Origin: Saccostrea cucullata
Taxonomy: Eukaryota
Assembly: GCF_032062105.1 (NCBI RefSeq)
Contig: NW_026918302.1
Span: 62,001 to 126,000, forward strand
Length of the DNA: 64,000 nt
Direction: 5' to 3'
Under the pieces are notes generated by a model, which saw only the letters and a list, made by a program, of their open reading frames with translations, ran no database searches and was not told the origin of the DNA. This document shows positions 669 through 22,200 of the stretch, piece after piece. A program made the translations under genes and the position numbers. The number at the start of each line of letters is the position of its first letter. Positions within the stretch are counted from its first letter, which is position 1.

Positions 669-1805
669 CTAATTTAGTCTCCATCCAGAGAAAGACGTAC
701 GTCCACCAGGCCCACTTTCTATGTTCCCAGAATTGGCCCCGGATTGTGTTCTGATGAAAACCTCATCCCCTTGGTTAACGTGAATGACTACCGTACGACT
801 GACCGTGTGGTCTCCGGTGGGGGCGTAGAGATAGACCACGCCCATAACGTTGTGGTTGTGCACCAGTTCCGCTCGGTGGTAAGAACCGTTGAATAAACGC
901 ATGGACCATGAAAAAACATAAAAGCCAGTTCGGGGAGCGATGAAAACTCCAGTGGTATTGCGATATCCGTTTCCAGCATTGGTGATTATTTTATCAAAGA
1001 TGAGAGTGCGCGAGGCACCAGGGTCAATGCTGTCACCCGTCATATACGCATAAAAAGCTATGACGTCTTTATATATACTTGTAGGAGGTGCATGGGTTGT
1101 AGGAAGTGGTAGCAATAGCCTTTCTGTGGAGAAAAAGTTTCTTTTAAAAGTGATTGCAGCAAACCATTTAATGAAGACCATCAACAACTTTGAATTCAGT
1201 GAAATTTGATTTTATAAATACAGAAAAGTATTATGAAAAAGAGGAGGGGACCCAAATTGCAATTTTCAATGCCTTTATTATTTTGTCTATCTTTTCAAAA
1301 AAGCGGGGGGAGGAGGGGGGGGGGGGCTAAGACCCCCTCGGTTTTGACGCTTATTTTTGAGTAATATGTCAATATTAACTATACCTTTTCTGATTTTTGA
1401 GATACCCTTCCTTTCTGTAGCTTTTGTCGACTCTCTATCTTCTTCCACTTGTTGTAATGAACTCTTCTTAATTTATCCGTTTTCATATTTTAACTTCGAA
1501 TGGTCATCTTTGCGTTGACTACTTTGAAACATTTTCTCAATGTCCGACAAAGCACCAATCAGATATTTATTTTCGTTTTTCAGTTTGATTATTTCCGTCT
1601 TCTGTTGTTGAAAACCAGCTGAGAGTTCAGAAACTTTTCTCATAAGAAAGTCAATTTTTTCTTGCTGAATGTGAAAAAATTTCTCATCGGAACATAACTT
1701 TTTCCCTTCGACATCTGCCGAGTGGATTTCCAATCCCGGGTGACCCAAAACACAGATTACATTAAGGAAACCAAAAAGAATACATAACATGTTACTTGTT
1801 TCCAT
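669..1805 (-). pseudogene. C1q domain-containing (C1qDC) gene: signal peptide + coiled coil + globular C1q; two exons; in-frame premature stop in exon 1
   Basis: Exon 1 runs 1805-1385 (METSNMLCILFGFLNVICVLG signal peptide, then coiled coil; donor AAAAG|GTATAG, phase 1). Exon 2 runs 1123-669 (acceptor CCACAG|; ERLLLP...IAFYAYM...LIFDKIITNAGNGYRNTTGVFIAPRTGFYVFSW...VIHVNQGDEVFIR...TSFSGWRL, a gC1q domain). TAA at 1473-1475 interrupts exon 1, but 29 more sense codons follow and splice in frame to exon 2. Confidence 0.85.
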
Positions 1806-1866
1806 ATTAAGACACCGACCGATTAACAATATATTCTGATGATCTATATTCTTATCAGTTTGATTG

Positions 1867-1990
1867 CACAGGCTCTTGACGTTTTTAACCTTTCTTTTCG
1901 TAAATAAAAATATCTCCTGTACTATATTATTATAGTACAGGGGATATTTTTATTTATGAAGAGAAAGGTTAAAAACGTCAAGCACCTGTG
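1867..1990. mobile_element. 124-bp fold-back (palindromic MITE-like) element about 60 bp upstream of the C1qDC start codon
   Basis: CACAGG..CTTGACGTTTTTAACCTTTC...CCTGTACTATA pairs with TATAGTACAGG...GAAAGGTTAAAAACGTCAAG..CCTGTG; arms about 60 bp, loop a few nt. Confidence 0.75.
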
Positions 1991-2062
1991 TTTAATTGCT
2001 CTAGTCCTAAGATTAAAATACATACATTAGGTATTCCTCAAGAAACAAAATCACATAGATAC

Positions 2063-2403
2063 TTTTTTTCGCAAAAAAGTGGCAAATAGTTTTTACATGA
2101 TATACACTTCGTGCAGTTGCGAATGTTTCAAAATTATTGACGAGACTAGAGACAATGTGAGCATTGAGCTCACAAAACGATACCACATCCCATATGATTA
2201 CAATGGCAAATACTTTTTTTCCTCTGGGAGACTCGAAATAAGTGTCAGATCAGAAAGTAAATAAAACAGGACGTCACAATGGCACTATGTAAGAAAGAAT
2301 TTGTGAATGTCATAAAAAATTTTATTCAGTGGTACAGGAGGAGTTGCGGATAAGAGATGGGTACCCTTCAATATTATAAATAGAATGGTTGTATCCCTGT
2401 TTT
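2063..2403. repeat. Diverged direct duplicate of 160-479
   Basis: Same collinear blocks as 160-479. Confidence 0.8.
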
Positions 2404-2925
2404 GCTATGAAAAACCAAAAAAGAAATATGTGTCAATCTAATAGTAATATATAGGAGGTGCACAATGACACTACAAGTGATTATGGTAGATATGAAATCA
2501 GTGTTTCCAGTATTAATGTCTGATTGACAAAATTTAATATAAACTATAACACAGATCTAACAACTTTGACACATGATGCATATTCTTTACACAGCCCCAT
2601 TTTATGTATTTCACTGACCCTGAATGGATAATTTTGGTTCCAAGGTCATTTATACATAAATGTATGTGTTGCAACAAATCTTACAATTAATTTATGTTTT
2701 GTCATTATTTTTGAGTATCACTTAATGTATTGATTTTTAGAAGTAAGATCACTTCAAACTGGTACTCATATCCTGGTACTGTTTTCTCTAATTAACCTCA
2801 GACTACGACGCAAAGGTTTAAGAGACACATACACATGTTTATTTAATTTTTTAAAGTTTTTTTTCATAACAATGACTTTCAAAATGCCATAAATAATGTA
2901 AATTTTATTAGTTTAAAAAGTGCAG

Positions 2926-5900
2926 TCATTTTGAAGGTTTCCTCATGTTATGCCACCATTTAATTACAGCTTCCCTCTTTTTCCAGATAAGATCCTGTCC
3001 ATATTTCATATACCATCTGAAAAACAAAAGTCGTGAAGTGTCAGTTTTTGTATTTCCTTTTCAGGATTCATGTAAAATCACAAAAAAAAATTATTTAAAA
3101 TACTGAAATTTTATATAGTTCCAAGAAAAATACCTACATGCCAAATAAGGTTCCACCTAAATGTGCAGCATGATCAAAAAATCCCCATCTAAATATAACT
3201 CCCAAGGTATCAAAGGTCACCAATGCTAGTAGACCCTAGGGATGGAAAATACATTTGCAATAATACTGTATTATATTATTCTGATATTCATGGGAAATCA
3301 GAATAGAGAGGCATTTGAATATTTTCTAGTACCGGGTATATAGATCTTTATTTGAAGGATGAATTTAAATGACTCTGTGAATGAGATGCGTTCAACTGAG
3401 AGCAAAGAATGTGCAACACAAGTATACAATAACTATTATTGTTGGTCAGTGTTTCATGTGTAATACTATTACTGGGAAGAAATACTTAATCAGCTGATAT
3501 TATTTTATGTACAACAATGATACAGCTAGAAATGATTCACCTCTAAATCAATCAAGCTAAATTTATCATGTACAAGCAAGAATTTAAAGGAATGAAGTGT
3601 TTGATAAAAAAATACAACTGAATTAATGTCTATATATGTACTCATTGACTGAGCCTTAAATGAGTGTGGGATAATCTGTTCTATAAACGCTATACTGAGT
3701 TGACTATCTGGGTAGATGTAATGTTTATGCTCACTGACTGAGCTGAAAATGAGTGTGGGATAATCTGGTCTATAAACGCTATACTGAGTTGACTATCTGG
3801 GGAGATTTAATGTCTATACTCACTGACTGAGCTGAAAATGAGTGTGGGATAATCTGGTCTATAAACGCTATACTGAGTTGACTATCTGGGTAGATTTAAT
3901 GTCTATACTCACTGACTGAGCTGAAAATGAGTGTGGGATAATCTGGTCTATAAACGCTATACTGAGTTGGCTATCTGGGTAGGTAAGACAGGTGGCTCCA
4001 ATCAAGGCACATATAGCACCTGACTAAACGACAGAAAAAATACCATTCAACAACACAATAAAAGAATGCAGACAATCTGTACTGACCTTAACTGATAATG
4101 CATTCTGGAACTTGAATATTTCAAATTATGATTGTAAGAACTTATTTATAGCAAATTTAATAACTAAAAAATCTGATAGAATCTACAAGACAAAGTATGC
4201 TTTTCTAAAAACGAAAATATGATATGCTAGTAAAGTTTTAGTATCAGCTCACCGCTCCTACAGAAGGGGTTGGAATCTTCCAGGCAACCTTGTTACACAT
4301 GCTCACAAAAGATGAAACAGCAGCTACAAGAAGAACAAAGAAAACAAATTAGATTAGTAAATTAAATAGAAAAAATCTCCTCTAAAAAAAAACTCACTGG
4401 CAAATAAGAGGCACTCATAAACCCTTAAAGCCACAAAGAAGAGGCATTATAATTATTACAGATCTGCCCTTTAAGAATTATACACATAAACATGATAAAG
4501 TATAGTATTTAAAGGACATTATCCTTATTAAGAGTCTTTTTAACAGACTTATGCCCCTATAATGTCATAAAGGTTTATGGTCATTATTTAGCTTCAAATA
4601 TTTCCCACATTAATATTTCTTTTTTTTTCATTTGAAAGTGATTGTCATTACGTTCTACAGAGAGAGATAAAATTGATATTTTTATGCTTTAAAAGGAAAC
4701 AATATTGATTACTAGTAATCAAAGAATGGGCTCCTCTCGTTTAACAAACTGCAGTATATATATATATATATAAATAGACCACTAACCACCACTCAGATAA
4801 ACTCCTAGAAACTGTTCCTTTCCAAACATGCTAAGAGTAACAGTAGAAAAACTCAACAGGACATACATATTACAGAACAGGTGGAGGAAGTTCTCATGGC
4901 TGAAGGCCGCAAAAAAGCTCCCCAGGACGGACTGTTCTGAAAAAGAACAAACAATTAATATTCTTTGACAACAGTGAGAAAATAGCAAGTCTGATTTGAA
5001 TTATAAAAGTTGTAACTTTTGACATCATACAATAGTTAAAATGTAATTTGTTATACTAAAGTACAAGCATTTAATATTTATTGACAATGGTGAGAAAATA
5101 CAGTAAGCATCAATGTTTTACTTTCTATATACCTTTACAAGGAGAGCATAAAAAATATCTCTGCATAAAGGGATAAATCCTGGGAATCTTCCATAAAACG
5201 TAAACAAAAGCATTGATCACAACAATGCCACTCACTAGGTTTGTCTGCAAGTAAAATTTAAAAAATAAATCTTGTCGTGGAAGAAAATATAAATTGCTTT
5301 ATTCATTTACATATGATTCAATGTATTTCCTCAAATAAAAATTATTTTAAACAAGAGATGTTTGTAAAACACTTATGCCCCTGTCACCCAAATAATTAGA
5401 ATTTTCTTAGTTGAAGGGGCATAACTCTGTCCAAAATGGTCCAATCTTACCCAAAACAAAACTTGATCTTGATATTCTAACGATAAATCTGTATACGAAA
5501 TTTCATTTCAATATGTGCAACCTCTGTAAAGAAAATGAACGGAAACTGGTGGTGGACCCACAGACAAACTGACAGATCGACCAACTGACAGACAGCAGCA
5601 AAGCATTTGCCCTCCCTTCTTCTAAGGGGGCATGAAAAATATTCCATTATACTTCTATTCAAAAAGTTACCAGTGTATTTTTTTCTAACTTGTATAAGTA
5701 AAGCATACCGGTATTACATCACATAACACATACCCTCAGCTGGTATATTGATTTATTACTGCTACTTACAACTTCTATGAAGTGATTTTTGAATGCTCCA
5801 TGGTTGAAGTACAATTGTTGCTTCATTGCTTGAATTTTTTTCTTTATGTTTTCATACTCCCAAATCATGGCACCTGTGAAACTGCACCCACATACCTACA

Positions 5901-17200: not shown

Positions 17201-19228
17201 ACTTGATTTTTTTTTTTTCATTTTGTTTATTTGCTTCTATGTACACTGATAATTTTTTTGTACTTTGAATTCTAGTCACAAATATAATTTCATATTTGTT
17301 TTTATTTGTATAGTATAGCATACTTTTGTTTTATAAGTACTTTTGGGCTTTTAATATCCACTATATTTTCATTTTATCAGCTGCTACTACTAGCAAGAGT
17401 CCTTCATCAGTTTTAAGTTCATCCTTCCAAAATAATACAGGTGTGCATTGATATTTGTATTCAAATGTTGAAGTTTGAGTGAATTAAGAACTAGTTAACA
17501 TCTTTTAGTTTAATGCATGTAAATACATTTGTTAATCAAATAATCAGATATATTCAGAAATACATACACTGTATTCACTTCGTGACGAAACATACATATG
17601 TACTTTCAATGATTTCTTTCTATGATTATAAAATATCATTATTTCCTGCATATGTTTGTTTAACTTTTCTCTTTTATTTCACTTCTCAGACAGCAGTGAT
17701 TCTGAAGCTGGGGTGGAAGAAATTGAGTTTACAAGTAAGTTGTCTTTCACTTAATGCACCAGTATTTAGAAATTAAAAATCTAGTAAATTACAATAAACT
17801 TTATTCATAAAATGGGTTGTGCAAGGGCTTTTTAAAAAAAACTTCAAATAAAGAGAAGTTATGTAAAATCCAAAGGCACCTTAGGTTGCACACATCTACC
17901 CCATACCAAGCATTACCTGAACACTCAGCACTACAAAATTTAAATCCTGTTACATGTACCATGATGGCATCCCAGATCAGTGCTAATTAACGTCTACATG
18001 TAGCTTCTGTATATATTGTTCAGGGAAAAATAAATCAACACTTTCCATACAGGAGTCTGAAATTTTAATTACTAACAATTCAAGTTGTAATTCTGTATGT
18101 TAAAAATAAAAGACAGACTTGTCAGAATAGCTGTAACATCATGATAAATAGAATACTACATATGGAATACTGATACATTTTTTTCCATTCAGCAAAAAGA
18201 GAAACAAATCTAAAATAAAGCACCATACAAATGGTGTGATGACAGATGATTGTGAAAATGAAAAAAAAATCAGTTTCTGACAATTCACTTTTAATGCAAC
18301 TGAATTATACAGTTTCAGATAATGAACAAGAAAATGAGGAAAATTTGAGTTTACTCAAATCCAAAGGGCTTTCATTATCCCTGGCTTCACTATACTCAGG
18401 TATGCACTTCAGTCCAAACCTTACCTCTGCTTGCTTACTTCGCAAAGTTTTGATTTCGAGTCCAACCAAGACAGAGAATCGATTGAGTCTGTCAAAGTTT
18501 TAAATTTTCTGATAAAAAATTATTTGTCACTTGTCTGTTTATCTGTATCCTTCTCCAAAACAAGAAATGTACATCAGTTGAAAGCAAAAATTTGATGTTA
18601 AACAGTTTATGGAAATCCTAAAAGACCTTATTTATCCCAATTTGTGCTACTCAGGTGAGTGTAGTTGCACATGAGCCTCTTGTTATTTTGATGCACTGAG
18701 CATGTGAAAGATTTCAAGAAAAAATTGCTTTTATTTTGTTTTAAAAAACTTAATTAATGTTAAAATCATTTCCTCCAAATGAAGTCAGAATATTAATCTC
18801 CAGTATATTTGCTTAATTACATTTACTGAATGACCACTTTCTTTTAAAGATGCTGATTTACAAAAGGTTAAACCTGACAGACAAAGGTAAGTTTTATGGT
18901 ATTGAATGTATGATTTTTCGTTACCATTGTGCTATATTGTAACAATAAAGTTAAATTTTTGAAACCATGCACGATGCTAGAGTAAAAATCTGAGTTGAGT
19001 TTGGACACGAGGTCAAAGACTCATTTAAAACAGATGTTTCTAAAGATTTTAAAATCTATAGGTTTATGTCTTTGTTGTGCAGTTCTATGGAGGTTTCAGA
19101 CCAGTCTGGAGTATCAGCAGAATCTGTGGCCATTCTTCTACTGAAGAAATTCTCAGAAAAGCAGCTTCCCAAGGCATCTGATTTAGAGTGGCTTGTTCCA
19201 ATTTCTGAGGCACCGCAGGAGGTGAGAG

Positions 19229-19279
<51 letters not shown>

Positions 19280-22200
19280 ACATTAATGTCAGTGAATGTG
19301 TGGTGTCACGGATTATCCGCGGATTTATGTATCGTACGTAACGTTATTGTTACGTCACAATACTGTACGTTATGTTTCTATAGTTAATAACAGAGTCTAA
19401 AATAAACCACTATACGATCAAGATGCATTTCTATTCTTTCCACAACAATTTTGGTGCCGTGATCGACGGAATGTCTACATAATACGTAAAATGGAAGGAA
19501 GACTGAAAGCCATACGGGCCGGTAACAGATCAGCGGTGACGAAACTTTTCGGACGATTTTTGGACTTGAAAGAAAATACAGCCAGTGAAGTAACGGGGGA
19601 AATCGAAATAATCAGAAAGTCCCTAACGCAAAAAAGACAAACTCTACAAGAACTAAATGAACGCATATTAGACGCATTATCTGAAGAGGACATAGAAGAA
19701 GAAATCACAAACACAGATGAGTATATGTACGAATTAGACTGCAAAATTAAGAAAACAGAAAAATTTACGATAAGGTTTCATGTAAAACTTTGAACGCCAG
19801 TGCTGAGTGTTTTGTACCCGCCTTAGAAATTCATGATAGTAACGTAAACACAGCAGCTGCAATCAACTCAAGTGAAACGGCTTGTGAGAATATTCTAAAC
19901 AATTTTCCTGCCACTGATCTCGATGAACAAAGTAACCACGATTGGCAGAAAAATGTTTTGTCATTACCATCCAACCAGGCCACAAATAATCATCGACTAC
20001 CGAAACTAAATCTTCCACATTTTGACGGGGATATACTAGAATGGAATACATTTTAGGATTCATACGAATCAACAATTCACCGCAACCAAACTTTAACACC
20101 AATTCAGAAGTTTTCGTATCTCAAGGCTCAATTACAGGACGCAGCAGCACAAACCATTGCAGGATTTACTCTCACAAACGCAAATTATGAAACCGCCATA
20201 GACCTGCTCAAGGAACGGTTTGGTCAACCGCAAAAAATTATCAATGCACACATGAGAGCACTTATGGAACTGCATGCCCCGAGAAACGACGCCATAAGTT
20301 TAAGAAATTATGGAGACTGCTTGGAATCTCAGGTCAGGAGTTTAGAGTGTTTAGGACAAAAACAAGAGATGTACGGAGCTTTACTTATTCCAGTCATAAT
20401 CAACAAGCTACCAGCTGAAATCCGGAAAAACATTGCACGTGAGTACGATGGTGACAACATTTCACTACACAATCTTCGTAAAGCTATCAGCAAAGAAGTC
20501 AAAATCCTTGAATCAGGCCAGATTGAAAACAGCGATGAATTCCACGCAACAGCAATGTTTCTTACCGGAGCCTCAAAGAAACAACGCCATGTTCATAATG
20601 GACACAACCAGAAAACAAGAAAGTCAACTCCTTATGTCGAAAGAACAGAGATAAAGAGCCGCCCATGCATTTATTGTTGCACAGAGAATCACTTTCCAGG
20701 GGACTGTAAGAAAGTTACAGAAGTAAGTACAAGATTCGATATCTTAATATGGAAGAAATTATGTTTCAACTGCTTAGGAAACCACCGCGCCACAGATTGT
20801 AAATCCCGCAACAGATGTAAAAAGTGCCAGAAGAAACACCACACAAGTATATGCGACATGAAACTAACGAGGGACAGAGACGAGCCCACCAAATCAACAA
20901 TTGTCAACATTGTAGGAACGAGCAAACCAAAACTCACAGAAATAAACGTTGAACAACGACATAAAAGTGTTTTATGGAAATCAGCTTCCACTTCTGTGAG
21001 TCGGACTGTGGACTCCATTCAAGAACGTAGCAAGCTGACTAACAAGATAAAGCAACTTAAGTCAGAGCTGAAGTCTAAGACAGAAAGGATTAACGCTTTG
21101 GAACGAGAAAATGGTACCCTGCTAGAGAGATTGTTAAATTTTGACCAACAAAGAAATTTTCAGACTATTGAAGGATATGATGGAACAGATAAATAAACTA
21201 GCGTACGAAAACGGGCGTCTGCATAACGAGGTTCATGAATTACAGAATCAAGTTGTTAATATCAAGACCTACAGCACTCACTTGGAGCATTTTCATGCTA
21301 AAAACAGCAATCTTCAGTCACGATATGATTACGCCCAAAGGCAAATAAGTTGTTGTGGAAAGAATAGAAATGCGTCTTGATCATATAGTGGTTTATTTTA
21401 GACTCTGTTATTAACTATAGAAACATAACGTACAGTATTGTGACGTAACAATAACGTTACGTACGATACATAAATCCGCAGATAATCCGTGACATGTGGA
21501 ATCAAAATCTATTTAGTTGAACTTTTTGAAATATTTCTTTTTTGCTTTGCAGTTACTTCCCTTGCCAAAGTCTTATCCAATATCCCCTGATGATGGGGAA
21601 AGTGAAATGGAAGGATTTACAAACTCTGTGATTGGGGTAAGAAACATGGCAACTTAATGGTTGCATAAGATGTATTTATTTACATGTAAAAAAAAAAGTC
21701 TTTCTAAGACTGCCACACTTTTTGGTCTGACATCTTATTGCAGTGCTTTTTTTTCAGGCATTGAGATTGAGGGGAAACAATGAATGGGCCCCTCCCCGAT
21801 CTCAGATAATTTTTGACATTCATCCATATCAGAAGTGAGTGAAACTTGAAATCAAACTAAGAGCATTATTGTCTTATTTTGTGTCAACTGTGAAAAGGAG
21901 AGTTAATTTTAAATACCCCTAATGTACAGTACATTAAAATATAATAGACAAAAGATAAAAGTTTATTTAAATACAAATGTAATTTGATGAATTTTCAGGA
22001 GAGGGGATGTAATGGAAAAACAGAATTTCCGGTGTGCTGGATGTGGAACCAGAGTTGAACCAGGTAAACCGACTGAGAACTGGTTTTAATTAAATTCTTA
22101 GAAAGCAAAATTTTTGTATATTTTATAGACAGTATAAAAATTATTTCCTTTTGATATACACTGTGTATACATATATGCAGTGTTTGTTTTTCTATTTTTT

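What the first reader, a model, noticed from the sequence alone, without database searches (positions are those of the whole stretch)
19299..21499. BEL/Pao retroelement whose two LTRs are inverted yet which carries a clean 5-bp TSD: candidate undescribed class of mobile element
Seen: a 144-bp repeat with LTR features (TG...CA ends, AATAAA, tRNA-His PBS 4 nt downstream, BEL gag 30 nt later) is matched at the other end by its exact full-length reverse complement (141/144), not by a direct copy. The unit is flanked by TGTGG on both sides, there is no polypurine tract before the right repeat, and there is no protease/RT/RNase H/integrase. Established: BEL/Pao elements have direct LTRs and typically 5-bp TSDs; strand transfer in LTR replication needs direct R repeats and a PPT; DIRS elements have inverted repeats but use a tyrosine recombinase and make no TSD; Ginger elements have TGT...ACA TIRs but encode an integrase, not Gag. 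Inference: the unit was probably integrated with two U3-type ends by a DDE integrase supplied in trans, so it is either a retro-derived element moving by a non-canonical route (fold-back reverse transcription, or DNA excision and reinsertion) or a rare one-off product. I do not recognise it as a described family, but cannot search to confirm that.
Basis: partly seen in the sequence, partly recalled or inferred. Interest (0 to 1): 0.95.

Follow-up and report, generated by a model that had tools for sequence, protein, structure and literature searches.

The report
One-off inverted-LTR copy of oyster BEL/Pao retrotransposon
The inverted-repeat element is real, but it is a single malformed copy of an ordinary oyster BEL/Pao retrotransposon family whose other copies have normal direct LTRs, so it is a curiosity of failed replication rather than a new class of mobile element.

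Summary
A 144-bp LTR (19304-19447) is matched by its reverse complement (21351-21494, 141/144). The unit is flanked by TGTGG on both sides, has an 11-nt tRNA-His primer-binding site and a decayed BEL/Pao gag, and encodes no pol.

The "new class" reading does not hold. The genome has more than 30 copies of this family. Fifteen loci examined carry a roughly 2.8-kb gag-only form with direct 145-bp LTRs, and ten of them have matching 5-bp duplications (seven distinct insertions, allowing for likely haplotig pairs). A 5.8-kb autonomous BEL/Pao partner also has direct LTRs.

The inverted junction occurs only at this locus and on its allelic contig. There the exact CA terminus of the LTR's U5 end is joined, upside down, to internal position 2063 of the standard element. 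The last 578 bp, including the primer tract for the second DNA strand, are missing. The three differences between the arms are private CpG-to-TpG changes, so the arms were identical at insertion.

Best reading: integrase joined an LTR end to the element's own cDNA (autointegration). The resulting sub-genomic DNA, bounded by two U3 ends, was then inserted once into a 135-bp intron of a Rubicon-like gene. It shows no sign of further mobility. Interest is modest.

The parts
19299..19303 (.). Left copy of the 5-bp target-site duplication TGTGG
   Evidence: Other family copies have 5-bp duplications of different sequence.
19304..19447 (+). 5' LTR, 144 bp, TGTCAC...CCACAACA, with an AATAAA-type signal at about 19401
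   Evidence: 96-98% identical to the LTRs of more than 40 other copies.
19452..19462 (+). Primer-binding site, 11-nt complement of the tRNA-His(GUG) 3' end plus CCA
   Evidence: tRNA-His gene of this genome at L034:1448-1519(-), ending ...GGTCACGGCA.
19491..21002 (+). Decayed BEL/Pao gag (DUF1759 plus three CCHC-type knuckles), broken by stops at 19791-19793 and 20054-20056
   Evidence: Collinear with positions 189-1699 shared by the gag-only and autonomous subfamilies.
21003..21350 (+). Remnant of the coiled-coil coding extension that replaces pol in the 2.8-kb subfamily; it ends at the break point (canonical position 2063)
   Evidence: weak coiled-coil Pfam hits only.
21350..21351 (.). Aberrant junction: internal ...AATAAGT joined to TGTTGTGG..., the exact CA terminus of U5 in reverse complement
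   Evidence: A 90-mer across the junction occurs only here and on the allelic contig.
21351..21494 (-). Full-length LTR in inverted orientation, with its U3 terminus facing outward
   Evidence: The 3 differences from the left LTR are all private CpG-to-TpG changes.
21495..21499 (.). Right copy of the 5-bp target-site duplication TGTGG
19066..19221 (+). Upstream exon of the host Rubicon-like gene (part of the exon seen as an ORF); the intron starts with GT at 19222
   Evidence: Pfam PF21054 RUBC_PIKBD, E=8.4e-13, profile positions 129-174.
21553..21636 (+). Downstream exon of the same host gene, following the AG at 21551-21552; the 3' end of the exon is approximate
   Evidence: PF21054 profile positions 174-193, contiguous with the upstream exon. 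The intron without the insert is 135 bp.

Best explanation
This is a dead, one-off, malformed retrotransposition product of an ordinary BEL/Pao family of an oyster genome (best protein match Saccostrea cucullata). The family's usual forms are a 5.8-kb autonomous element and a roughly 2.8-kb gag-only derivative. Both have direct 145-bp LTRs, a tRNA-His PBS and 5-bp target duplications. Inferred sequence of events: while the cDNA of a gag-only copy was still extrachromosomal, integrase joined the processed CA-3'OH of the U5 end of the 3' LTR to the opposite strand of the same (or a sibling) cDNA at internal position 2063. This is a half-site autointegration. The plus strand of the 3' LTR starts at the U3 boundary, where it is primed. 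The joined strand therefore reads LTR (plus sense) followed by the minus strand from position 2063 down to the 5' LTR. Copying that strand gives a 2191-bp duplex of 5' LTR, PBS, gag up to 2063, and an inverted LTR. It lacks the last 578 bp of internal sequence and the 3' primer tract, and both termini are U3 ends. Integrase supplied in trans then inserted this duplex through its two identical U3 ends into a 135-bp intron of a Rubicon-like gene, making the TGTGG duplication. The product has no 3' R/U5 in the right orientation and no primer tract, so it cannot be copied again, and it has not spread. Shown: the anatomy, the uniqueness of the junction, the direct LTRs elsewhere, the exact-terminus junction, and the arms being identical at insertion. 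Inferred: the order of events and the role of integrase at the internal junction.
For: (1) Family context. One search finds more than 30 copies matching positions 1-2047 only. Searches show 15 loci with direct LTR pairs about 2.7-2.8 kb apart. Ten of them have matching 5-bp duplications (atgag, ataag, gaact, gtgta, gtagg, tcttt, atgcc, acacc), which make seven distinct insertions if the two likely haplotig pairs are counted once and the two loci sharing tcttt are counted once. Searches show an autonomous 5806-bp copy (C21058:286159-291964) with direct LTRs, TSD gatgg, the DUF1758 peptidase domain and RT motifs. (2) Uniqueness. The junction 90-mer is found only at the window locus and on contig C10864. 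A scan of about 50 LTR termini in 31 loci finds no other U5-to-internal inverted junction. (3) Junction. Canonical copies read ...aataagt GATCTAAAT, while the window reads ...aataagt TGTTGTGGAAAG. This starts at the same CA terminus that abuts host DNA at 3' LTRs with matching duplications. None of the 2-4 spacer bases that separate U5 from the PBS are clearly present, although one T is ambiguous. (4) The three differences between the arms are CpG-to-TpG. Each is derived in one arm only, while 44-47 of 47 other LTRs carry the other arm's state, so the arms were identical when inserted, like the LTRs of one cDNA. (5) The exact full-length termini plus a perfect 5-bp duplication fit a single integrase-mediated insertion of the whole unit. 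(6) The same structure stands on an allelic contig with diverged flanks. (7) Autointegration in the opposite-strand orientation is a documented side reaction of retroviruses and LTR retrotransposons. It yields LTR ends joined to inverted internal sequence (PMC2644782 abstract; PMC7197481, read). (8) The U3 and U5 termini are alike (TGTCACGGA against TGTTGTGGA), so an integrase accepting two U3 ends is plausible. That last point is inference plus my own recollection of in vitro work with two-U3 donor DNAs, not checked here.
Against: Nothing shows directly that integrase rather than reverse transcriptase or end joining made the internal junction, and the junction has a 1-nt ambiguity (a T). I found no described case of an autointegration product that was later integrated into a chromosome. 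The proposed intermediate needs a plus-strand discontinuity at the U3 boundary, which is assumed and not shown for this family. No empty-site allele sequence was recovered, so insertion of the whole unit in a single event rests on the 5-bp duplication alone. Short-read contigs did not span the junctions.
Confidence: 0.55

Rival explanations
1. The outcome is the same (one aberrant cDNA inserted once through two U3 ends), but the internal junction was made without integrase. Either reverse transcriptase switched from position 2063 onto the 3' end of a free plus-strand LTR fragment and copied it to its U3 start, or host end joining ligated an LTR-length duplex to a broken cDNA.
For: All family-level evidence is the same as for the best explanation. 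The single shared T at the junction could be 1-nt microhomology. The break lies just after a purine-rich run (AAAGGCAAATAAG) where synthesis might pause or be primed.
Against: The join falls within 0-1 nt of the integrase-processed CA terminus. An unprocessed cDNA end would carry the 2-4 spacer bases seen between U5 and the PBS. A template switch has no reason to land exactly on that base.
Confidence: 0.2
2. The rearrangement happened in the chromosome after insertion. A canonical 2.8-kb copy inserted with TSD TGTGG. A second copy then inserted upside down at position 2063 and collapsed to a solo LTR. Finally a microhomology-mediated deletion (ACA/ACA) removed everything from the solo LTR's U3 end to the end of the original 3' LTR.
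For: Nested insertions of this family into itself and LTR-in-LTR arrangements exist (L013). Both deletion end points would end in ACA. The internal junction would still be integrase-made, which fits.
Against: It needs three events, and the deletion end points must coincide to the base with two element termini while leaving the duplication intact. The two arms were identical at origin, with only private CpG changes since. That is expected for one cDNA and less so for two separate copies of a family whose LTRs differ by 2-6%. No trace of the nested copy's own 5-bp duplication remains.
Confidence: 0.15
3. One reading: a new kind of mobile element with inverted LTR-derived ends that moves by a non-canonical route, such as integrase-driven DNA transposition.
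For: The unit has perfect full-length inverted termini that an integrase could recognise, together with a clean 5-bp duplication.
Against: It occupies one locus only, plus its allele. All other inverted LTR pairs found are something else: a palindrome that includes host flanks at C21470, and nested or complex arrays at C6183 and C15359. The copy is decayed, with stops in gag.
Confidence: 0.03
4. Assembly artefact: the right LTR was wrongly oriented or a chimeric read was used.
For: This is a repeat-rich family and a fragmented assembly of 23,869 contigs. One clear fold-back palindrome was seen elsewhere (C21470). No read-level confirmation was obtained.
Against: Two contigs assembled from different haplotypes carry the identical architecture, junction and duplication. 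Their flanks are only about 92-97% identical and the elements differ at 10 sites. The flanks here are not inverted, unlike those at C21470.
Confidence: 0.04

Closest known systems
BEL/Pao (Belpaoviridae) LTR retrotransposons of bivalves
   Same: Gag carries DUF1759 and CCHC knuckles. Sister copies carry the DUF1758 peptidase domain. Homologues from other bivalves carry the DUF1758/Peptidase_A17 protease, RT and integrase domains. The LTRs are short and end TG..CA, the PBS matches a tRNA 3' end, and target duplications are 5 bp.
   Different: This copy has no pol, lacks the 3' primer tract, and has its second LTR inverted. The family as a whole is ordinary.
Non-autonomous LTR derivatives (gag-only / LARD- or TRIM-like elements mobilised in trans)
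   Same: The 2.8-kb subfamily keeps the LTRs, PBS, gag and the last ~290 bp of internal sequence (with the 3' LTR, the terminal 436 bp) of the autonomous element. It has many copies with TSDs, so it was mobilised in trans.
   Different: Pol is replaced by a roughly 280-aa coiled-coil extension in frame with gag, giving a 748-aa ORF in one copy. The window copy is in addition truncated and rearranged.
Autointegration ('suicide') products of retroviruses, Ty1 and Arabidopsis SISYPHUS (inversion and deletion circles)
   Same: An exact LTR terminus is joined to an internal site of the element's own DNA in inverted orientation (PMC2644782; PMC7197481).
   Different: Described products are extrachromosomal dead-end circles. 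This one is linear, bounded by two U3 ends, and sits in a chromosome with a target duplication.
DIRS retrotransposons
   Same: They have inverted terminal repeats and a gag-like ORF.
   Different: DIRS elements encode RT and a tyrosine recombinase, have an internal complementary region and make no TSD. Here there is a 5-bp TSD, TG..CA LTR ends, a tRNA PBS and BEL/Pao gag, and no recombinase.
Ginger / Polinton-type DNA transposons with retroviral-like integrase
   Same: They have TG..CA-type inverted termini and short TSDs made by a DDE integrase.
   Different: Those elements encode their own integrase and exist as multi-copy TIR families. This unit encodes only a decayed gag and is single-copy.

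Membership tests
BEL/Pao LTR retrotransposon family | BEL/Pao-type Gag (Pfam DUF1759) | tested here: met
   window ORF E=1.9e-7; sister copy L004 E=9.6e-37; homologues carry PF03564.
BEL/Pao LTR retrotransposon family | Pol with Pao-type aspartic protease, RT, RNase H and integrase, in an autonomous member sharing the LTRs | tested here: inconclusive
   DUF1758 peptidase (E=1.1e-6) and RT motifs were read in the frame downstream of gag in L023/L025/L026. Homologous proteins carry PF05380, PF00078, PF00665 and PF17921. The integrase of this particular family copy was not itself scanned. The window copy has no pol.
BEL/Pao LTR retrotransposon family | Direct LTRs ending TG..CA | tested here: not met
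   Not met by the window copy, whose second LTR is inverted. Met by 15 loci with direct LTR pairs and by the autonomous copy.
BEL/Pao LTR retrotransposon family | PBS complementary to a host tRNA 3' end next to the 5' LTR | tested here: met
   An 11-nt match to this genome's tRNA-His(GUG) plus CCA.
BEL/Pao LTR retrotransposon family | Target-site duplication of fixed short length (5 bp here) | tested here: met
   TGTGG at the window copy. Ten further loci with matching 5-bp duplications (seven distinct insertions), plus the autonomous copy.
   The junction 90-mer occurs only at the window locus and its allele. No other such pair appears among the scored LTR hits. Only the best 40 of about 115 candidates are scored per search, but full-length junction matches would rank first.
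DIRS | Tyrosine recombinase and RT encoded; no TSD | tested here: not met
   No such ORFs or Pfam hits. A TSD is present.
Ginger-type DNA transposon | Element-encoded DDE integrase between the TIRs | tested here: not met
   Only gag and a coiled-coil remnant lie between the arms.
Autointegration product | Processed LTR terminus (CA) joined directly to an internal site of the element | tested here: met
   the U5 CA terminus abuts canonical position 2063 in reverse orientation, with a 1-nt ambiguity.
Autointegration product | Made by integrase on extrachromosomal cDNA | not testable with these tools
   This needs sequencing of particle or extrachromosomal DNA, or biochemistry.

The most novel reading that the evidence does not exclude
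The locus is a chromosomal fossil showing that a BEL/Pao integrase can insert, in vivo, a sub-genomic autointegration by-product bounded by two U3 ends. Together with the second exact-terminus inverted junction at C15359, it would mean this family recurrently produces integration-competent DNAs with inverted LTR ends. That would be a natural example of the step from an LTR retroelement to a TIR-bounded, integrase-mobilised DNA unit.
Probability: 0.08. Interest if true: 0.65.

Novelty: new member of a known kind. Interest (0 to 1): 0.27.

Why it matters
The finding closes a high-scoring lead: there is no new class of mobile element here. What remains is a neat natural specimen. Autointegration is normally seen only as dead-end circles in particles or infected cells, and here a product of that type appears to have been integrated into a germline chromosome through two U3 ends. 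That is of some interest to people who study integrase end recognition and the decay routes of LTR elements, but it is a single event. The work also documents an oyster BEL/Pao family with a gag-plus-coiled-coil non-autonomous derivative, and an intronic insertion in a Rubicon-like gene that may still be polymorphic.

Tried and rejected
I worked from 1.5-kb flanks plus three small fetches. L031 proved uninformative.

2. The head-to-head pair at C21470 looked like a second two-U3 structure. Its host flanks are themselves reverse complements, so it is a large palindrome or assembly fold-back and not an integration through two U3 ends.

3. Public reads gave only short Logan contigs that break at repeats. 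None listed spans either junction, so the reads give neither support nor contradiction. Two contigs (X3 record 15, X7 record 26) start matching exactly at 21495 and carry 40 and 103 further letters that do not lie on the LTR. The tool also dropped one joint in X7 at the adjacent (GA)n. This is compatible with empty-site alleles, but the letters were not shown, so it is unproven.

4. A 15-nt extension of the PBS complement finds no tRNA gene. Only 11 nt pair with tRNA-His.

5. Literature searches for integrated elements with inverted LTRs found only DIRS papers and autointegration circles. "Internal inversion" is a routine category of defective HIV proviruses, but those keep direct LTRs. Garfinkel et al. 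2006 was not held. Repbase and Dfam could not be queried.

6. Simple fold-back reverse transcription is rejected, because the internal region is not present twice in inverted form.

7. A search of the scan's earlier notes near this place found nothing.

Copies were only compared.

Full report
**1. What is in the sequence**

- **Repeat.** The repeat finder reports inverted arms at 19304-19458 / 21340-21494. Base-by-base comparison limits the true repeat to a 144-bp LTR at 19304-19447 and its reverse complement at 21351-21494, with 3 differences.
- **Ends and duplication.** The LTR begins TGTCAC and ends CCACAACA. TGTGG flanks the unit at 19299-19303 and 21495-21499.
- **Primer-binding site.** Four bases after the left LTR lies TGGTGCCGTGA. 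I fetched a tRNA-His(GUG) gene from this genome (L034:1448-1519, minus strand). It ends ...GGTCACGGCA, so with CCA added the match is 11 nt. A longer 15-nt match does not exist.
- **Coding content.** The ORF pieces between the arms are a decayed BEL/Pao gag (DUF1759, E=1.9e-7) with three CCHC-type knuckles, followed by a coiled-coil stretch. There is no pol.
- **Host context.** The unit sits in an intron between two consecutive exons of a Rubicon-like gene. Pfam RUBC_PIKBD profile positions 129-174 lie in the upstream exon and 174-193 in the downstream exon. Without the insert the intron would be 135 bp.

**2. The family**

A search of the window's own genome (1.17 Gb, 23,869 contigs) finds more than 30 related copies.

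- **Copies matching the whole unit.** Only one other place matches all 2191 bp: contig C10864. It is the other haplotype of the same locus. It has the same flanks, orientation-reversed, at about 92-97% identity with many indels, and it differs from the window element at 10 of 2191 positions.
- **Gag-only form.** Most other full-length copies match positions 1-2047 of the unit and then continue for about 580 bp into a direct 3' LTR. Fifteen loci have direct LTR pairs, giving elements of about 2.7-2.8 kb. Ten of them carry matching 5-bp duplications (atgag, ataag, gaact, gtgta, gtagg, tcttt, atgcc, acacc). These make seven distinct insertions if likely haplotig pairs, and the two loci sharing tcttt, are counted once. 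The other five are tandem or rearranged. One such copy has an uninterrupted 748-aa frame: gag (DUF1759, E=9.6e-37), knuckles, and a coiled-coil tail of about 280 aa.
- **Autonomous form.** A second subfamily (L023, L025, L026, L027) shares positions 1-1699. It then runs into a frame with the Pao-type peptidase domain DUF1758 and recognisable RT motifs. The copy at C21058:286159-291964 is 5806 bp, has direct LTRs and the duplication gatgg, and shares its last ~290 bp of internal sequence plus the 3' LTR (436 bp in all) with the gag-only form.
- **Host species.** The closest database protein (94% identity over the full length) is an uncharacterised protein of the oyster Saccostrea cucullata. More distant relatives from Mytilus, Mercenaria, Ruditapes and Dreissena carry DUF1759, DUF1758, Peptidase_A17, RT and integrase domains.

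The family is therefore an ordinary bivalve BEL/Pao lineage with an abundant non-autonomous gag-only derivative.

**3. What is special about the window copy**

- **The junction.** Canonical copies read ...aataagt GATCTAAAT at position 2063. The window reads ...aataagt TGTTGTGGAAAG. The inverted LTR thus starts exactly at the CA terminus of U5, the same base that abuts host DNA at the 3' LTRs with matching duplications. The 2-4 spacer bases that lie between U5 and the PBS are not carried along, although one T is ambiguous.
- **What is missing.** The last 578 bp of internal sequence, including the tract before the 3' LTR, are absent.
- **Uniqueness.** A 90-mer across the junction occurs only at this locus and its allele. 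I checked what abuts each end of about 50 LTRs in 31 loci. All are canonical except five kinds of case: this locus, a complex array at C15359, an LTR nested in an LTR at C6183, tandem LTRs in L007 and L009, and a short partial LTR duplication in L017.
- **State of the arms at insertion.** The three differences between the arms are all CpG-to-TpG. In each case one arm keeps the state found in 44-47 of 47 other LTRs. The arms were therefore identical when the unit was inserted, as the two LTRs of one cDNA are.

**4. How it most likely arose**

An exact LTR terminus joined to an internal site in inverted orientation is the signature of integrase-catalysed strand transfer into the element's own DNA. 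This is autointegration, a documented side reaction of retroviruses, Ty1 and plant elements (PMC2644782; PMC7197481, read).

A half-site event accounts for every feature:

1. The CA-3'OH of the plus strand of the 3' LTR attacks the minus strand at position 2063.
2. That plus strand begins at the U3 boundary, so the joined strand is LTR (plus sense) followed by the minus strand from 2063 back through the 5' LTR.
3. Its complement is 5' LTR, PBS, gag to 2063, inverted LTR.
4. The duplex ends in two identical U3 termini, which integrase supplied in trans could insert with the family's usual 5-bp duplication.

The steps after the junction are inference. That integrases can use two U3 ends is my recollection of in vitro work and was not checked here. 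The two natural termini are in any case similar (TGTCACGGA against TGTTGTGGA).

The rivals are:

- The same cDNA-level product, but with the junction made by a template switch or by end joining.
- A chromosomal history of nested inverted insertion, solo-LTR formation and a base-perfect deletion.
- A mobile new class of element.
- Misassembly.

The first rival cannot be excluded. The second needs three events and two exact coincidences, and it fits less well with arms that were identical at origin. The third fails its own test. The fourth is unlikely because two haplotype contigs agree.

**5. Limits**

- I could not obtain spanning reads. Logan contigs break at the repeat.
- Two contigs from two runs begin matching exactly at 21495 and continue with letters that are not the LTR, which would fit empty-site alleles, but their letters were not shown.
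- Repbase and Dfam were not available.
- Genome searches score only the best 40 of about 115 candidates, so copy counts are lower bounds.

**6. Verdict**

It is a tidy fossil of an aberrant replication product and of modest interest.

Noticed in passing
L011 = G000:C15359:1-5024 (structure at 1046-4650): A complex array of the same family is flanked by the 5-bp repeat CAACT. Both outer LTRs are on the minus strand. The exact U3 terminus of the left one abuts plus-oriented internal positions ~2371-2641. A full plus-strand unit follows, then 7 nt of PBS, then inverted positions 421-146. This is a second exact-terminus-to-internal inverted junction in the family. It could be an aberrant cDNA, a later rearrangement, or a misassembled stretch at the start of the contig.
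   Followed up: partly
window 19304-21494 against G000:C10864:118885-121075 and flanks: The two allelic contigs differ at only 10 of 2191 positions inside the element (0.46%), but far more in the immediate flanks (right flank of 306 bp is 92% identical, with many indels). Recombination or conversion close to the insert, or polishing effects, might explain this. Unexplained.
   Followed up: partly
L004:1689-3935 (G000:C12298) and P0001: The 2.8-kb subfamily encodes gag fused in frame to a coiled-coil tail of about 280 aa that replaces pol. The frame is uninterrupted in at least one copy. A 94%-identical 747-aa protein is annotated as uncharacterised in Saccostrea cucullata. The origin of the coiled-coil part (a captured host sequence?) was not traced.
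   Followed up: partly
window 19066-19221 and 21553 onward; (GA)n at 19224-19276: The host gene is Rubicon-like (PF21054 PI3K-binding domain, contiguous across the two exons). The insertion lies 23 bp after a long (GA)n microsatellite, in what would otherwise be a 135-bp intron, on the same strand as the gene. The 144-bp inverted arms could pair in the pre-mRNA. Any effect on splicing is unknown.
   Followed up: no
window 21495 (runs X3 and X7): Contigs from two public runs begin matching exactly at the right duplication and carry 40 and 103 more letters that do not lie on the LTR. One joint in X7 was dropped by the tool at the neighbouring microsatellite. This is possibly an empty-site allele, meaning the insertion may be polymorphic.
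   Followed up: partly
L032 = G000:C21470:46200-51200: Two 5' portions (positions 1-503) of the family face each other, and the host flanks are also exact reverse complements. This is a large palindrome or an assembly fold-back, not an element with inverted LTRs.
   Followed up: yes
L013 (G000:C6183), L007/L009 (C16189/C21858), and C17664, C15312, C15267, C12367: An LTR is nested upside down inside another LTR of the family at C6183. In L007/L009 two LTRs stand in tandem 19 bp apart. On C17664, C15312, C15267 and C12367 two same-strand LTRs lie 10-165 bp apart. These suggest self-targeting or local rearrangements in this family.
   Followed up: no
run X6, contig record 20: A related organism's run holds a 2.1-kb contig about 95% identical to window 19339-20925 that then diverges. 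The family is therefore shared with at least one other sampled taxon or population.
   Followed up: no
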